Below, piece after piece: positions 37,263 through 43,876 of a stretch of DNA of 64,000 bases; the first letter of the stretch is position 1; the number at the start of each line of letters is the position of its first letter. The notes below the pieces were generated by a model. It was not told the origin of the DNA. It did not search any database and worked only from the letters and a program-made list of their open reading frames with translations. This stretch comes from Setoptus koraiensis (Eukaryota; Animalia; Arthropoda): contig CM106586.1 of assembly GCA_048013815.1 (NCBI GenBank), forward strand, positions 4,340,001 to 4,404,000, given 5' to 3'. The position numbers and the translations under genes are program-made.

Positions 37263-38856
37263 GGCCTCCACAACTTTAAAACGATCGCTGCTGAGCGACC
37301 GCTCGCCATAAATCAGCTCGGATATTTGATTCGAGTGGTCGTTCTTTACAACGTTTGGCCCTCATTGCAACAATTGAGCCAGTAAGACAACCAACACACA
37401 CACAATCAGCAGCACGAAGTCTGGCAAATGATCTGAATGCTCGCAGTGATTGTTGCTGCGCGCGTTGGTCCGACAACCAGACGAACGCATTATCGAGTAT
37501 CATCATTAGCATCCATTTGTTGTCTGATTGTCGGATCGAGCAACGTTCTGTTTTTTATCCGTACTCGTTTCTCATGGACTAATTGTTACCAATTGCCAGA
37601 CAATGCTATGGTTGAGAAGGGTTTCATTCGAATGAATGTGATATGGCTGCGTTGCAAGCAGCCAGCAGCAAAAAACAATTGCCGACGACGACATGTGTAC
37701 GGCTATGGCCAGATTGAGATGTGCCGATGTGTAGACAATAGTTGGAGAGGGTTCAAACTGGCTCCAAATGGCTCAAAATAGCTCAAAATAGTCAGTTTAA
37801 AATGGATATAAGCAGTTATCACGGAAATGTGCAAACTTGCAAGATAGTTCTTTGTCTCACTCAATTATCAGACTCTGTAATAATCAATTGGCGACTGTCG
37901 TTTTTGCTACAGCCATTTGAATGTGTGTTGAGATATAAATTAGCACGCAATGATGGCGCCAACTATTTGCCAACGGCCACTATCATCGATCGAAGTACGT
38001 GCAAAAAACTCGACGGCAAGCTTGACGATTGGCACTGCGCTAACTGAATGACAGTCGATTGTGAAACAACACAAGTTTAAATTTTGTCCGACGTTCATCG
38101 TGCCAATGATCGGGCAAAGTTGCACGGAGTGTGTCTTATCTCATATGATCTTATGGCTTGCCAATTTCATCTGCTTGCCAATTGATTTATGCCCACATGC
38201 GCTCAATTGACGATAGAGCGTTTCTTTAATTGGCTGCACCAACCACTCGACTACGAAACACTTTTTTTTTCATGAATCTAAATTTGTCAAATATGTTATA
38301 TTAATAATCCATTCGATCTCATCTCATTGCAACCGTTAATACTAATTTCTCAATCATGCAGCCACAATGAGATTGTGCGTGACACAAGGCGATTATGGCA
38401 ATTGTTTGGAAATGGTGAGAAACCGCCAAGGTAGCCCGACAAATACAATTGCCTGTGTTGAGGCGCGCGACAGGTAAGTTAATACAATAATGATAATAAT
38501 AAACATAAGTCAATCTCGTGTCAATGACTATTGAATAGATAAAACGCGATCCAACTATAACAGAAACAACTAACTAATTTTAGAATAGTAGTGTGCCAAA
38601 GAATCAGAACAAATCTACGAGAAAATTCCGAGCTGTTTTTTTTCTCTCCACAATGTGCAAGATGTTTTGTCCAGACTTTTTTCTTGCGTTATCCTCTGTC
38701 AAAAGAGAATGAGAGACCGAGTTTGTGCGATGGGCAAATGTGCTGCGATCAAATAATGGCGGCGACACGCTGTTGGCAAGCTCGACGATTCTTCGGCAGG
38801 CTTGTGTTCTAGAGTACAAACTCATGCTATCAAATATTTGTTCTTATGCCACCCAG

Positions 38857-41800
38857 GTTCGAATGTATGAAATTCATTATCAATGGCAAGGCTGACGTAG
38901 TCAATCTAGATAACGAGGAGCTCTATCTAGCCGGTCGCCTCTACAATCTGGAACCGTTTGCCAGTGAGCAATATAGCCAAGGTGAGTTGTTTGCTCTCTC
39001 GCTCTCTTACAAATGTTTACAGCTGTACGTACACCTAATCCATCTAAAGCAGATATAAACAAACAATTTCTCGCCTTCATTCATCGCTCATATGAATTGC
39101 TATATAGATGTCATTTGTTCCGTTGTATGTGCTTGCGCTGTCGTTATAATCTGTTCTAATCTCTAAAAACTTGTAACTGTTATTATCACTATTATCCTTG
39201 AATTGAAAATGCTCTATCACGGTGCCATAGGTGATCGTCAGTCTGTTGTCATAGTAAATAGGCAAGCAAATATAAACGCGCTGACGGATCTCAAAGGCAA
39301 ACGAAGCTGCCATGGTGCCATGAATAGCACCTTTGGTTGGGACGTACCCATTGGCTTGCTGCTAGCCACCATGTCTATGAGCCCCGATTGTCGAGGGGAA
39401 CTATACTCCGCGGCGGAATTCTTTGGACAAAGTTGTGCACCAGGTGAGTAGAGGCAATAATTAACTCATGACGTCGTAAAATATACAAATGGCTTAAATC
39501 CAGAGAAAGTGAAATATTGTCTTAAGCGATTATGAGCTCGCACAATGTTGCTACATGAATGACTTGCGAATGACGGGCCAGCCGATCGCAAGTCACTGGC
39601 CCGTTAGCAATAAAATTTAGCTTATTGCTTCGATTATCAAGAACCATATATCATGTAGCCAAATATTGAAGGAGTACATTGCTCATCTCGGTGTTCCTTT
39701 TTTTTCTATAATAAACATTTAACATTATTACTTTGCTTAATTCCGACACCCGTGCATACGACCGAAAAACCGACCCGACTGACAACGGCAACAAATCACC
39801 GGATTATCACCTCTACAAATGCACTTCCGCTTGCATTAGGGTAAGTATGATGGCTCGAGATTTGAATAACTGACTTGTTTTACATCATCGACTTGTTTGA
39901 CATTAGATGACATCAATTAATCTGGTTGATTTATTGAACTCATGTCACTATGCAAGCGCAGGCATTATGACATCATAACAGCAGCTTAATATGTTATGTA
40001 CAGCTACAGTGTATGTTGTTTGTATTAGTATTATTAATTACTTTATTTTGTATTGTTGCCTTCTTTTTGTTCCAACCATTCAAACAACAATACTTCAGCT
40101 CGTGGTCGCCTGATCCTTATGTCGATGCCGAACTAAGTAAGTAACAAGACACGACACAACGTTTTGTCACGCTAACAAGACAAGCATTTATCTACAAATC
40201 TGCTATCTGATTCAATAATAATCATCTGTCAGCTTATCTCAAGCGTACAAACTTGCTCGACTGCTACTCGAGGCCTGACTGTTGGGTGGGCTCAAAAGAG
40301 CACGTGATAATGTGATCTCACATCTGTATATATTTATCAATAATCTCATTATCATCTTTTGATCATTATTATTTCTGTTTGCAATCTTAACCGCCGATCA
40401 CAACAATCAGAAAAACTGCATCCAAATCTGTGTGCGGCTTGCAGAAATTCAACACTTTGCTCTATAAACGATGAATTTGCCGGCGAGGAGGGCGCCCTGA
40501 AATGTTTGTTCAGGAATTCGGGTGATGTTGCATTCACTACTAAAGATGCTGTTGACAGATTTCTATCTCTGTATGTTCGCGATGAGAGATTATTCGAACA
40601 ATATGAATTCTTGTGCTTGGACGGAACCAGAAAGCCCCTGACCGATCGGAATCCCTGTGAGTGGGCCCAAAAACCAGGCAACGTCTTTGTTACTTCGCCC
40701 GGCCGATGTAAGTTGCTTGAAAGAGCCCAGAAATTCATTAAAGCTTTCTGTCAAACAACGGACTGACTAGTGTATTGCTTTCATACAATAATAACAACAT
40801 CAATCTATCATTTGTTTCATCATTTCATGACGACTAGCTTTACAAAAGGACATCTATCATCGTCTATTGGATCACACCTTTCTCAGTCATGAATCTGTGA
40901 AGCCCTCCTGGTGGCGAATGCGATCGTTTATCTCAAGGCCATTCGATGTAACTAGAATAGTTCAGATACCATTCGAGAATCAACAATGGGATCGATATCT
41001 GGGTAAGCCTGACAAGCTAGGGACGATCTTGTTCTTTGATCAATCGTTTGAGGTGGCGTTGATAGGTGGCAGCAGAGCAGTAATATTCGGATTTTTTCTT
41101 TATTTCTGTGATTCTTCATTAGGAAATTATATATCGTCTATAGAGAAGCCATTGCCAGATTGTCAGCCCCGAAACTTGACTTTCTGTACTGCGTCTGCAA
41201 TTGAAGAGACCAAATGTCTTGAGTTACAGAAGGTGAGTAAAACTCTTTGAAACGGCCAGCTTTATCCTGTGAGGTTCGTTTAGCTCAATGAAAATTAATT
41301 TAATTGCTTGTTTTCGTATATCTGATTTCAACAAACAGGTTGCATTTTCGCGCAGGATTAGACCAGAGATTGACTGCCAACGACAAAATAGCAAACAAGA
41401 GTGCATAGATATTGTCTCTCGAGGTAAAGCTGATTTGATATTAATGGATATGGGAGAACTTTATGAGACACAACGACAAACGTGAGTATTGGTGGTAATA
41501 AATTGAGCTATCCCATTTTAATTAGACATTGCTGAATTTTATCGACTGTGCTGCCGATGTATTGAGTAAGCAATCATTATTATGATCACTTGATCTGCTG
41601 CATTATCCTCATACGCCGATGTTGAAGCGTTACTATGTTGAGGCAGAAGGTTTGCCTCAAGCTAGACGAGTGTTGCTGACATCACCTCATACTGATGCCA
41701 TCTTATTTTCGCTCGGAAACATTGGCTGTCTTGCTTAGAATGTTTAGATGCAACTAAGACACTCAAAACATGCACGTCTCGATTGTCAGTACGAATGGTC

Positions 41801-43876
41801 TTCTCAACCTGTTCAATCGACATCTCATCAATTATAGAATGAGATTTGTTTGGCTCGTGGCTGCTCTGCTCAGGAGCATGTGATTCCATGAAAACTCCTA
41901 TAGAATTGTCATCACGAATGGTATATTTGATTTGGTGACGTGTAGTCGACACCTCTCATAGTATCAGACATGCTTGACTCGAAGTTGCTTTCCGTTTTTC
42001 GCTACATCTTGTCATTCGATGGATGTTTCTGGAAAAGAATGATAGTCTCACAGAGTCGTGTCGATCGATAGCGGTGATGTTTTCGGACAAGACCATTTTA
42101 CTTGTTGTTTGCGAAGCTCTATCAATAATTTCAACTCGTAGATGATGGGTGTGAGCTTCACCAGCATGCATTTGGTGTCAACCCTGATAGATTTTCGGCC
42201 AATAAACTCGCCCACGATGAAGCTGTCTTTTGATGTCCGTTATTCTCCAGTTGTACTCACCTTAACAAGAATTGTTAAATCGGCTTAAATTCGCTGATCA
42301 TCTCTCTATTGTAACTAATGCATCTCTGTTTTACATTCGTCGTATAATTAATCCTGGCCATTTTAACGACCAACTATGCGTTTCTGATCAAATTATTGAT
42401 ACAACAACAACATTGAAATTCATTGAAGTGCCCTGCGTCTAGAACCTATCGCTGTTGCTCAAACAAAAACAGATTTTGCTGTTGCACTGGTTAAAGCCGA
42501 TTCCGGCATTAAATTCCTCTATCAATTGGGCGGCAGACGCACATGTCACCCATCGTTTGGCGACATTGCCGGATGGCTAATACCCATAGATGTGCTGTCC
42601 GAGCGGTCGATGTTGGACAGAAACGATTGCAATAAGGCCGATCAAATGGCCGCATATTTTGGTGGAAGCTGTGTCCCAGGTAAGTGGTGCCGGCCATGGA
42701 TTTGATCTTTATCTACGCCTTGAACCTTAAGAATTAACAGGTTATTGTCTCTTGTCCATCCGATAAATTGCCTGTTTAGGAGCTGCGGATCTACGCGTCA
42801 ATCAGTATCGATCTGGTTCCGATAGATTGTGTGAAGTTTGTCAGGTAGGTGTCAGGAATCACGATCAACCGGGTTCGTTTATTTATTATTTCTTTTTATC
42901 ATTGTTGCTAAACTTTCCGCTCACACTTGTATTGCAATCGTCACTTTTGTTTGTCAGGGTGATGAGATCACAGGTTTGCATCAGTGCGAAAGGTCACCAT
43001 CCGAACGATTCTTCGGGCAAACGGGTGCACTCAGATGTCTAGCTGAGGGCGCAGGCGAAGTAGGTTAGTATTAAGCGATTTATGTATTGTATCGACTTTT
43101 AGATTGATAAATCTACAACCAGACGGTCTAATGTGACTACTCTGTTCTGGCCAATCCCATTAGCTTTTCTATCTCATTCAACCATCATGGCCAACGTCGA
43201 TGGACGGAGCCAGCACTCGTGGTCTTCACATGATCCGCTTGCCCTTGACAGTAAAAATTTTAGACTCATTTGCCGGACAGGACCAAGGTAAGAGAGGGAA
43301 AGGAAGAGAGAGGGAGAGGAAGAGAGAGGAAGAGGAAAACATCAGATAATACATCTCTCACTATAAAAGATGCAAGGTGTATTTGTATAGGATAGTAACA
43401 TTATATTGTTGTCTTCATATTGCAGCATGCTAATCACCGACCAGGAGAGATGTAATCTAAGCAAAATGCCTGGAAAACTGCTAGTTACATCCAGATTTGC
43501 CTCTTTTGAAGATAAACTGGATATGAGGAGTCTCGTTGTTTCACTAGCTGATAGATTCGGACAACAGGGCCAAGATTTCCAACTGTTCGCCCCATACAAC
43601 AATGTAACAAATCTTTTATTTGATGATGAAACCACATCGATGGTGGCCATACCCCAGGAATTATCATCAGGCTCATTTGAATTGGTGTTCAAACAGTATT
43701 TCGATAGCTCTTACGACCAGGTGCCGGCGAGCAAAGGATCAAACAGTTGCAAACTGACTATAACAAGTGGCTCAAAGTCTCTGGTAGAATACTCATTAGT
43801 AATGACGCAAGTTACTACCGTTATCGCGTCTAATGTCTTCTCACTGGCACTGTTATATGTATTCCATTTTCTATGA
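38857..43876 (+). CDS. Melanotransferrin-like (Tsf2/Tsf3-type) two-lobed transferrin with GPI-signal-like C-terminus. Exons 38857-38981, 39231-39443, [39840], 40099-40136, 40411-40707, 40838-41002, 41123-41232, 41339-41481, 42429-42679, 42780-42844, 42958-43063, 43164-43287, 43426-43876; 5' exons unresolved
   Basis: Motifs KADVVNLD, DLKGKRSCH...GWDVPIG, SCAPG, HPNLCAAC, GALKCL...GDVAF, FLCLDG, AFSRRIRPEIDC, GSCVPG, GALRCLAEGAGEVAF. All GT-AG junctions are phase-compatible except one, which is resolved by G39840. Hydrophobic C-terminal tail. Confidence 0.92.
39840..39840 (+). other. Candidate 1-nt microexon (G) of the transferrin-family gene
   Basis: cttccgcttgcattAG|G|GTAAGT, preceded by a 163-nt AG-free zone; it converts phase 1 to phase 2 and gives SCAPG-SWSPDP. 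Confidence 0.65.

What the first reader, a model, noticed from the sequence alone, without database searches (positions are those of the whole stretch)
39675..40136. Probable single-nucleotide exon (G39840) required to keep the transferrin in frame
Seen: the upstream exon ends CCA G|GTGAGT (phase 1). The next exon (cAG|C TCG TGG TCG CCT GAT CCT, SWSPDP) needs phase 2, and its frame is confirmed by the phase-matched downstream join (AEL-K-KLHPNLC). Between them lies cttccgcttgcattAG|G|GTAAGT, an acceptor and a perfect donor one base apart, preceded by 163 nt with no AG dinucleotide (39675-39837). Including the G gives CCA GGC TCG TGG = SCAPGSWSPDP, the compact motif expected in transferrin N-lobes. 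Known: 1-nt exons are very rare (one reported in Arabidopsis APC11), and AG/GT junctions underlie recursive splicing. Inference: a 1-nt exon, perhaps spliced recursively; skipping it would frameshift the mRNA and could act as an NMD switch. Less attractive in-frame alternatives exist: an acceptor at 40028 (inserts ~23 hydrophobic aa) or a 166-nt exon 39675-39840 (poor acceptor, ~55-aa insert).
Basis: partly seen in the sequence, partly recalled or inferred. Interest (0 to 1): 0.85.

Follow-up and report, generated by a model that had tools for sequence, protein, structure and literature searches.

The report
One-base exon in mite transferrin
A single G sitting between a splice acceptor and a splice donor is very probably a one-nucleotide exon that supplies the middle base of a conserved glycine codon in a gall-mite transferrin gene; I found no earlier report of this in an animal nuclear gene, but no RNA read across the junction was available.

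Summary
The upstream exon ends CCAG|GTGAGT at 39443 (phase 1). A 38-nt mini-exon (40099-40136) starts in phase 2. Between them lies AG|G|GTAAGT, with G at 39840, behind 163 AG-free bases. An independent DNA assembly confirms every junction base, so this is not an assembly error.

The main evidence is comparative. The gene is a melanotransferrin-like gene of an eriophyoid mite. Six other eriophyoid loci show the same layout: CCAG|GTRAGT, then an intronic YAG|G|GTRAG, then a phase-2 exon N NNN TGG. The surrounding intron sequence does not align. Five further loci have the G fused to the next exon (AG|GY NNN TGG). On a protein tree the split form is ancestral, and the fused form arose at least twice by intron loss.

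The mini-exon shows a coding signature in exactly the frame that needs the extra base. The 1-nt exon is the only in-frame solution shared by all seven loci, and it restores the conserved C-A-P-G-x-W motif.

RNA contigs of the same organism confirm six other introns of the gene but do not cross this junction. One contig ends exactly at CCAGG.

One-nucleotide exons are known in plants and in Fusarium. I found none reported for an animal nuclear gene. The scan has not noted this elsewhere.

The parts
39231..39443 (+). Upstream transferrin exon (N-lobe). It ends ...TGT GCA CCA G in phase 1, followed by the donor GTGAGT.
   Evidence: Pfam PF00405, E=2e-12. tblastn with eriophyoid homologues. RNA contig X9#15 covers 39246-39444. 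The only AG in 39150-39230 ends at 39230.
39444..39839 (+). Intron a (396 nt), GTGAGT...CATTAG.
   Evidence: Sequence. The same intron position is found in 12 eriophyoid loci.
39675..39837 (+). AG-free zone of 163 nt in front of the acceptor of intron a.
   Evidence: The same acceptor in six other species has AG-free zones of 83-227 nt. Other true acceptors of this gene have 28-157 nt.
39840..39840 (+). Proposed one-nucleotide exon (G). It is the second base of the Gly codon G|G|C in the C-A-P-G motif.
   Evidence: AG|G|GTAAGT. Conserved as YAG|G|GTRAG in L001, L003, L007, L008, L010 and L012. It is the only in-frame solution common to all seven loci.
39841..40098 (+). Intron b (258 nt), GTAAGT...CTTCAG.
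   Evidence: Sequence. This intron is absent, with the G fused to the next exon, in L002, L004, L005, L006 and L011.
40099..40136 (+). 38-nt mini-exon, C TCG TGG TCG CCT GAT CCT TAT GTC GAT GCC GAA CTA A (..SWSPDPYVDAEL..). It starts in phase 2 and ends in phase 1.
   Evidence: Homologous peptide in P0011, P0151 and all eriophyoid loci. Codon-position variability is 0.27/0.07/0.54 in this frame among 8 split-form species.
40137..40410 (+). Intron c (274 nt), GTAAGT...ATCAG.
   Evidence: Sequence. The join EL-K-KLHP matches the homologues' ELKKLHP and ELKRLHP. No RNA contig covers this join.
40411..40707 (+). Next exon (AA AAA CTG CAT ... = KLHPNLCAAC...). Its true donor is at 40707|40708, joined to 40838.
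   Evidence: Pfam PF00405, E=7e-15. RNA contig X6#9 runs 40530-40707 and continues with letters that match 40838 onward.
40838..43876 (+). Rest of the gene. Exons are 40838-41002, 41123-41232, 41339-41481, 42429-42679, 42780-42844, 42958-43063, 43164-43287 and 43426-43876 (stop included). The product has a hydrophobic C-terminal tail.
   Evidence: GT..AG joints in RNA contigs of runs X6 and X8. Boundaries resolved and the ORF checked.

Best explanation
G39840 is a constitutive one-nucleotide exon of a melanotransferrin-like gene in an eriophyoid (gall or rust) mite.

The pre-mRNA carries two ordinary GT-AG introns separated by a single G: intron a (39444-39839) and intron b (39841-40098). Removing both joins CCA G + G + C TCG TGG. 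This rebuilds the Gly codon of the conserved C-A-P-G motif from three exons and puts the 38-nt mini-exon in frame (SCAP-G-S-WSPDPYVDAEL-K-KLHPNLC).

An acceptor and a donor one base apart cannot both be occupied at once. The two introns must therefore be removed one after the other by intron definition, in the manner of recursive splicing except that one base is kept. This step is inferred, and the order is unknown.

The arrangement is ancestral for the sampled Eriophyoidea. Lineages that lost intron b now carry AG|GY NNN TGG. That is what is expected if a reverse-transcribed spliced mRNA replaced the gene's 3' part, so these lineages act as a genomic record that the mRNA contains exactly one G there.

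The arrangement itself is probably a frozen accident rather than a regulatory device. This is inference.
For: 1. The sequence and phases are as described. The full ORF is open only with G plus the 38-nt exon, or with both left out.

2. Seven species share the split form, among them Fragariocoptes setiger (GCA_019968535.1): WIN, L001, L003, L007, L008, L010 and L012. Each has CCAG|GTRAGT, then an intronic YAG|G|GTRAG with an AG-free zone of 83-227 nt, then an exon starting N NNN TGG in phase 2. Only the core YAGGGTRAG aligns. The expected chance occurrence of AGGGTRAGT is 0.003-0.013 per intron, with a product of about 1e-11 over five loci. L009 has the same 38-nt phase-2 exon, but its contig is too short to reach the G.

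3. Five loci (L002, L004, L005, L006, L011) have the G fused to the next exon: AG|GC or AG|GT NNN TGG.

4. On the protein tree the split form sits on the two deepest eriophyoid branches and on several crown branches, and the fused form sits in two separate places. The split form is therefore ancestral.

5. The mini-exon has a coding signature in the required frame. Mean pairwise differences at codon positions 1, 2 and 3 are 0.27, 0.07 and 0.54 among 8 split-form species.

6. Relatives have exactly Gly plus one residue before the Trp: Aceria tosichella CAP-GPWSSD (P0151), and P0193, P0194 and P0196 CAPG(K/R)WS.D.

7. No other in-frame route is shared. L001, L008, L010 and L012 have no longer-exon route, and L001, L008 and L010 have no single-acceptor route (L012 was not run through that second check).

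8. The independent DNA contig X3 has no difference at any of the junctions.

9. RNA contig X9#15 ends at 39444, so it reads CCAGG. The base after CCAG is therefore G. It is not C (G skipped), A (both skipped) or T (either longer-exon alternative).
Against: - No read or contig crosses the junction in this or any other split-form species. RNA contigs leave 39445-40529 uncovered, and two protein searches for junction-spanning peptides returned only genomic ORFs.
- The terminal G of contig X9#15 is equally the first base of the unspliced intron.
- The gene structure of A. tosichella is unknown. By its place in the tree it probably has the fused form, so its protein shows what the product should be, not how this locus is spliced.
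- Skipping G and the mini-exon together is in frame, and this is the model annotated for F. setiger (P0003).
- L003 and L007 have a tandem AGAG acceptor that would give an in-frame CAP-A-W without the G.
Confidence: 0.85

Rival explanations
1. The G and the 38-nt mini-exon are both skipped. The mature mRNA joins 39443 directly to 40411 (SCAP-E-KLHPNLC), as in the public annotation of the F. setiger orthologue. On this view AG|G|GT and the mini-exon are unused relics, or are used only in a minor isoform.
For: This join is in frame and open for 650 codons. The annotated F. setiger protein P0003 reads SCAP-ERQHAN-LC. No RNA contig shows the mini-exon.
Against: The mini-exon is conserved as coding sequence in one frame across 8 split-form species, with mainly third-position change. 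AG|G|GTRAG is conserved in seven loci. Fused-form species encode the segment inside one long ORF. The A. tosichella protein and more distant relatives contain the segment. Contig X9#15 has G, not A, after CCAG. The F. setiger model is an automatic prediction that could not have placed a 1-nt exon.
Confidence: 0.06
2. The extra G comes from a shifted, non-canonical splice site and not from G39840. Either the donor is used one base later (intron TG...AG), or the acceptor is used one base earlier (intron GT...CA). Both would give the same mRNA, CCAGGCTCG.
For: The mRNA sequence alone cannot tell these apart, because a donor begins with G and an acceptor ends with G.
Against: TG or TA at the 5' end, or CA or TA at the 3' end, are not spliceosomal dinucleotides (established knowledge). 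This reading leaves the conserved AG|G|GTRAG and its AG-free zone in seven species unexplained. The six RNA-supported introns of this gene are all GT..AG.
Confidence: 0.03
3. In this species a longer exon restores the frame. One option is exon 39675-39840 (166 nt, about 55 extra residues) or 39672-39840, using the same donor. The other is an acceptor giving exon start 40029 (25 extra hydrophobic residues).
For: All three are open and in frame in the window.
Against: None exists in the split-form species checked: none of six for the longer-exon route, and in the five run through the single-acceptor check only the L003/L007 AGAG acceptor, which is not this kind of insertion. The insertions would break the conserved C-A-P-G-x-W spacing. 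Contig X9#15 has G, not T, after CCAG, and RNA depth is zero over 39484-40167.
Confidence: 0.03
4. Assembly error (one base missing at a junction), or a frameshifted pseudogene.
For: A one-base phase mismatch is what a homopolymer error or a recent frameshift would produce.
Against: The independent DNA contig X3 (5764 nt, a different study) differs only by +T after 39697 and by four SNPs far from the junctions. The same mismatch is seen in seven other independent assemblies of other species. The gene is transcribed and spliced, and its ORF is otherwise intact.
Confidence: 0.01

Closest known systems
One-nucleotide exon of Fusarium CYP621A P450 genes (PMC12940212)
   Same: The sequence is the same, AG|G|GT. 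The single G is the middle base of a Gly codon in a conserved motif (PKG there, CAPG here). There is a phase-1 to phase-2 mismatch between the neighbouring exons. The exon is conserved across orthologues, an intronless relative serves as a length marker, and automatic gene models get it wrong.
   Different: That case is in a fungus, with very short introns (139 nt in all) and SRA reads across the junction. This case is in an animal, with introns of 258-2500 nt and no read across the junction yet.
One-nucleotide exons of plant APC11 and VPS55 (PMC4674806, PMC8831610)
   Same: A single base lies between canonical AG and GTRAGT. It is missing from reference annotations and conserved over long evolutionary times. 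In some lineages the base is 'subsumed' in a larger exon after intron loss. Those authors also proposed stepwise removal of the two introns.
   Different: Those are plant genes. The base is A in APC11. They were validated by reporter constructs, RT-PCR and RNA-seq. VPS55 shows alternative use, which has not been examined here.
Recursive splicing at zero-nucleotide ratchet points in Drosophila (PMC8605326; Duff et al. 2015, cited in PMC4674806)
   Same: A strong acceptor and a strong donor (YAG|GTRAGT) are juxtaposed inside what looks like one intron, and the site is used in successive splicing reactions.
   Different: At a ratchet point nothing is retained and the order is fixed, because the donor is completed only by the upstream exon. 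Here one base is retained, the donor AGG|GTAAGT is complete before any splicing, either order is chemically possible, and the introns are short.
Single-base-pair cox1 exon of placozoan mitochondria (PMC5436844)
   Same: It is a one-base exon in an animal.
   Different: It is a mitochondrial gene with organellar introns and trans-splicing, not spliceosomal GT-AG introns.
Melanotransferrin / insect Tsf2-type transferrins (host gene)
   Same: There are two transferrin lobes (PF00405 in both halves) and a hydrophobic C-terminal tail. The best named relatives are 'melanotransferrin-like' (Limulus) and mite 'transferrin-like' proteins.
   Different: Iron binding, GPI anchoring and function were not tested.

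Membership tests
Spliceosomal one-nucleotide exon | A single base is flanked directly by a canonical acceptor AG and a canonical donor GT. | tested here: met
   CATTAG|G|GTAAGT at 39834-39846. The donor matches GTRAGT perfectly. The acceptor has a 163-nt AG-free zone, like other true acceptors of this gene.
Spliceosomal one-nucleotide exon | The neighbouring exons are out of phase by exactly one base, and the ORF is restored by including that base. | tested here: met
   Phase 1 at 39443 and phase 2 at 40099. With the G the ORF is open for 663 codons; without it there is a TAA in the mini-exon.
Spliceosomal one-nucleotide exon | The site and the phase mismatch are conserved in orthologues. | tested here: met
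   Six further loci have YAG|G|GTRAG plus a phase-2 exon, and one more has the phase-2 exon on a truncated contig.
Spliceosomal one-nucleotide exon | A homologue lacking the intron(s) shows the same base contiguous with its neighbours. | tested here: met
   L002, L004, L005, L006 and L011 have AG|GY NNN TGG. More distant ORFs P0193, P0194, P0196 and P0197 have [AP]G-x-WS contiguous with the upstream exon: CAPG in the first three, CAAG in P0197.
Spliceosomal one-nucleotide exon | The mature mRNA contains the base, shown by reads or cDNA across both junctions. | tested here: inconclusive
   RNA contigs of runs X6, X8 and X9 do not cover 39445-40529. One contig ends at CCAGG.
Recursive-splicing ratchet point (zero-nucleotide exon) | AG|GT are juxtaposed with no base retained in the mRNA. 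| tested here: not met
   One base lies between AG and GT, and the reading frame requires it.
Recursive-splicing ratchet point (zero-nucleotide exon) | Stepwise removal, shown by intermediates or a saw-tooth read pattern. | not testable with these tools
   Only assembled contigs at depth 2-8 were available.
Transferrin family (PF00405), bilobal | Transferrin domains in both halves of the protein. | tested here: met
   PF00405 hits for exons 39203-39442 and 40413-40751. The C-lobe exons align to homologues' C-lobes. The assembled ORF has both C[AV]PG...LC..C motifs.

The most novel reading that the evidence does not exclude
This is the first spliceosomal one-nucleotide exon in an animal nuclear gene. 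It is constitutive, ancestral to the eriophyoid mites and kept in most sampled lineages. It splits one glycine codon over three exons, in a clade otherwise known for extreme intron loss. It is removed by an obligatory two-step, recursive-like pathway. Lineages that lost the downstream intron preserve a DNA copy of the spliced junction.
Probability: 0.75. Interest if true: 0.75.

Novelty: new member of a known kind. Interest (0 to 1): 0.7.

Why it matters
[quoted passage not shown] That would show the metazoan spliceosome can handle an acceptor and a donor one base apart in a gene that is probably essential.

It offers a natural system with both split and fused forms in related species. That system could be used to study the order of removal of adjacent introns, the limits of exon versus intron definition, and reverse-transcriptase-mediated intron loss.

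On the practical side, it shows that gene predictors mis-model such loci. The public F. setiger model drops 13 residues. A phase-1 to phase-2 mismatch together with an intronic AG-N-GTRAG is a usable search signature.

Tried and rejected
- **RNA run search.** No run was listed as holding the spliced N-lobe. Three low-depth RNA runs (X6, X8, X9) turned out to be from the same organism, but their contigs stop short of the junction. The caps on the look-up of sequencing runs and read laying were then exhausted, so raw reads could not be queried.
- **Protein searches for transcript-derived peptides across the junction.** P0151:80-280 and P0151:140-215 returned only genomic ORFs that end just after CAPG.
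- **P0011 (CAP-HEWSPDPIVDAELKK).** No encoding contig is on record.
- **P0002.** The contig could not be fetched because the sample file is too large.
- **P0198.** This is a close relative of the window's species (about 88% identity in the upstream exon).
- **Assembly error.** Rejected on the independent DNA contig and on seven other assemblies.
- **Shifted non-canonical splice sites.** Rejected as unable to explain the conserved AG|G|GTRAG.
- **Longer-exon alternatives.** Rejected as specific to this species.
- **The 163-nt AG-free tract as a special feature.** Rejected. True acceptors of this gene commonly have long AG-free zones (28-157 nt).
- **Earlier notes of this scan.** They list other microexon candidates in this genome but no 1-nt exon.
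Full report
**1. What is in the sequence**

- A transferrin exon ends ...TGT GCA CCA G|GTGAGT, with its last exon base at 39443 (phase 1).
- At 39838-39846 lies AG|G|GTAAGT, with G at 39840. It is preceded by 163 nt without any AG (39675-39837).
- At 40099-40136 lies a 38-nt segment, cAG|C TCG TGG ... GAA CTA A|GTAAGT, which needs two bases from upstream.
- The next exon starts at 40411 (cAG|AA AAA CTG CAT).

Both larger exons hit Pfam Transferrin PF00405. AGGGTRAGT occurs only once on both strands of the 64-kb window.

I built the rest of the gene model from RNA-supported junctions and translated four versions.
- With the G and the 38-nt exon, the ORF is open for 663 codons to the stop at 43874-43876.
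- Without the G, there is a TAA inside the mini-exon.
- With the G only, there is an early stop.
- Without both, the ORF is again open (650 codons, SCAP-E-KLHPNLC).

It is the main competing model.

**2. Whose gene it is**

A HMMER search of 1.84 billion representative proteins with the exon 40413-40751 found transferrins at up to 58% identity. Names from the second protein database show that the nearest relatives are eriophyoid mites: Fragariocoptes setiger (P0003, GCA_019968535.1) and Aceria tosichella (P0151). Many unnamed proteins from Logan, ENA and JGI contigs also match. More distant hits are 'transferrin-like' proteins of other mites and 'melanotransferrin-like' of Limulus.

The product has two lobes and a hydrophobic C-terminal tail. 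That fits a melanotransferrin/Tsf2-type protein; this last point is inference.

**3. Is the mini-exon real?**

- The F. setiger annotation reads SCAP-ERQHAN-LC, so it skips the segment.
- Other relatives contain it with the same spacing: P0011 has CAP-HEWSPDPIVDAELKK, A. tosichella has CAP-GPWSSDSGIDMELK, and P0193, P0194 and P0196 have CAPG(K/R)WS.D..D.(E/Q)L.
- The 1-nt-exon model gives CAP-G-S-WSPDPYVDAEL-K. That is Gly, then one residue, then Trp, as in those relatives.
- Among eight species that share the split structure, the mean pairwise difference at codon positions 1, 2 and 3 is 0.27, 0.07 and 0.54 in this frame. This is a clear coding signature in the very frame that requires the extra base.

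**4. The comparative test**

I fetched the genomic loci of eleven relatives and examined the junction in each.

*Split form.* Seven loci have it: the window, L001 (F. setiger), L003, L007, L008, L010 and L012.
- Each has an upstream exon ending CCAG|GTRAGT.
- Each has, 0.4-2.5 kb into the intron, YAG|G|GTRAG behind an AG-free zone of 83-227 nt.
- Each then has an exon beginning N NNN TGG in phase 2.
- The Gly codon is always G|G|N (GGC, GGT or GGA).
- Around the G only the ten bases YAGGGTRAGT align. The rest of the intron does not.
- By base composition the expected number of AGGGTRAGT per intron is 0.003-0.013, with a product of about 1e-11 for five loci.
- L009 has the same 38-nt phase-2 exon, but its contig ends before the G would appear.

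*Fused form.* Five loci have it: L002, L004, L005, L006 and L011. They have a single ordinary phase-1 intron and AG|GC or AG|GT NNN TGG, so the G is contiguous with the following bases. The ORF usually then runs without introns to the stop.

**5. Polarity**

I built a maximum-likelihood tree of 22 proteins, with four more distant transferrins (Oppia, Sarcoptes, Dinothrombium and the unnamed P0011) as outgroup. No fetched sequences other than very short fragments were left out.

F. setiger and the window's species sit on the deepest eriophyoid branches. Both have the split form. The split form also occurs in several crown lineages. The fused form occurs in L002 and, separately, in the clade containing L004, L005, L006 and A. 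tosichella.

The split form is therefore parsimoniously ancestral, and intron b was lost at least twice. The tree is midpoint-rooted and several inner forks are weak, so the number of losses is a minimum estimate, not a firm count.

Eriophyoids are known for massive intron loss (PMC7738191). In the fused loci all introns from the G to the stop are gone. That is the pattern expected from recombination with a reverse-transcribed mRNA. If so, the fused genes are DNA copies of the spliced junction, and they contain exactly one G. This is inference.

**6. Alternatives examined**

- *A single acceptor contiguous with the mini-exon.* L001, L008 and L010 have none. The window has only exon start 40029, which gives 25 hydrophobic residues. 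L003 and L007 have a tandem AGAG acceptor that gives CAP-A-W.
- *A longer exon ending at the same donor.* Only the window has this (166 or 169 nt). None of the six other split-form loci does.
- *A donor or acceptor shifted by one base.* This would give the same mRNA but needs TG/TA...AG or GT...CA/TA introns. It also leaves the conserved AG|G|GTRAG unexplained.
- *Assembly error.* A 5764-nt contig from an independent DNA run (X3) matches 38800-43002 except for +T after 39697 and four SNPs at 41765-42386.

The one-nucleotide exon is the only solution common to all seven loci.

**7. RNA evidence**

Runs X6, X8 and X9 hold spliced contigs that are at least 99% identical to the window. The gene is therefore transcribed.

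Six introns are confirmed as GT..AG: 41003-41122, 41233-41338, 41482-42428, 42680-42779, 42845-42957 and 43064-43163. The donor at 40707 is also confirmed.

Depth is low (2-8), and nothing covers 39445-40529.

One 199-nt contig (X9#15) covers 39246-39444 end to end. It stops at CCAGG, one base beyond the canonical exon end.
- The base after CCAG in the RNA is therefore G.
- It is not C (G skipped), A (both skipped) or T (either longer-exon alternative).
- A de Bruijn contig would end exactly there if the mRNA (next base C), an intermediate (next base G) and the pre-mRNA (next base T) coexist.
- It is also what unspliced RNA with a chance end of coverage would give.

I count this contig as suggestive only.

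**8. How it probably works**

Shown: there are two canonical introns one base apart, and both splice-site pairs are strong. The donors are CAG|GTGAGT and AGG|GTAAGT. The acceptors have long AG-free zones, like the other acceptors of this gene (28-157 nt).

Inferred:
- U1 on the donor and the acceptor-recognising factors on the AG would overlap. The exon therefore cannot be 'defined', and the two introns are removed successively by intron definition.
- Either order is chemically unproblematic. The donor is complete before any splicing, because the acceptor's AG mimics the exon's AG. After intron b is removed, the acceptor faces a normal exon.
- The authors of the Arabidopsis case reached the same conclusion (PMC4674806).
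- I see no evidence for a regulatory (NMD) role. Mis-splicing would give a stop or a 13-residue deletion.

**9. Comparison with what is known**

Full-text searches and reading found these cases.
- 1-nt exons in Arabidopsis APC11 (validated).
- Plant APC11 and VPS55 (conserved across land plants, and subsumed in intronless copies).
- Fusarium CYP621A, which is strikingly similar: AGGGT, the middle base of a Gly codon in a conserved motif, described there as only the second example.
- A mitochondrial 1-bp cox1 exon in placozoans. This is in an animal but is organellar, not spliceosomal.

I found no report of a spliceosomal 1-nt exon in an animal nuclear gene. The library does not hold most subscription-journal papers, so this is absence within what could be searched.

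Drosophila ratchet points are the nearest animal mechanism, but they retain no base.

**10. Verdict**

I put confidence that G39840 is a real one-nucleotide exon at about 0.85. What is lacking is a read across the junction.

It is a new member of a known kind. It is of interest for its taxon, for its conservation across a whole mite superfamily, and for the paired split and fused natural variants.

Noticed in passing
L001:3001-8654 (Fragariocoptes setiger, GCA_019968535.1, protein GZH46_01567): The public gene model skips the G and the 38-nt mini-exon, so it reads SCAP-E-RQHANLC. Its last ~120 residues do not resemble transferrin, and the protein sits on a very long branch in the tree. The model is probably wrong at both places.
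   Followed up: partly
window:40700-40840: The long ORF 40359-40766 overshoots the exon. An RNA contig shows that the true donor is at 40707|40708 (CGAT|GTAAGT), joined to 40838.
   Followed up: yes
window:43780-43876: The transferrin ends in a hydrophobic tail (..VTTVIASNVFSLALLYVFHFL). This fits a GPI-anchored melanotransferrin/Tsf2-type protein rather than a secreted serum-type transferrin.
   Followed up: no
window:44230-44775 (-), and L003, L006, L007, L008, L009 downstream of the transferrin: A histone-fold gene (PF00125; an H3 variant in the window) lies just downstream of the transferrin in the window and in five relatives' loci. The neighbourhood is therefore conserved across Eriophyoidea.
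   Followed up: no
window:39697; 41765, 41868, 42309, 42386, 43126: An independent DNA run of the same organism has one more T in the T-run after 39697 and five single-base differences. All are intronic or away from the junctions. They are probably ordinary polymorphism.
   Followed up: no
window:39840-43426 (all acceptors of the gene): True acceptors in this gene have unusually long AG-free zones: 28-163 nt with a median of about 65, against a median intronic AG-to-AG gap of 11. They often have an A/C-rich stretch next to the AG and the T-rich tract further upstream. This may be a feature of these mites' introns in general, possibly reflecting distal branch points.
   Followed up: partly
L003:4325-4340 and L007:4815-4830: In two split-form species the mini-exon acceptor is a tandem AGAG. 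Using the second AG would give an in-frame CAP-A-W without the 1-nt exon. This may be a possible escape route or an alternative isoform.
   Followed up: partly
P0193, P0194, P0196, P0197 (distant relatives of unknown taxon): In these genomic ORFs CAPG-x-WS.D..D..L (CAAG in P0197) is contiguous with the upstream exon, and only the intron after ..EL/QL is present. Both introns flanking the G may therefore be gains on the eriophyoid stem. However, the window's C-lobe has an intron at the homologous Gly codon (CCAG|GTAAGT...TTTAG|GAGCTG, 42679|42780). P0193 is labelled Acinetobacter baumannii in nr, which looks like contamination.
   Followed up: no
P0198 (Logan contig of 3108 nt, not fetched): This is an 80-residue ORF about 88% identical to the window's upstream exon. 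It comes from a much closer relative than any locus examined, and it would be the best next locus to check for the G.
   Followed up: no
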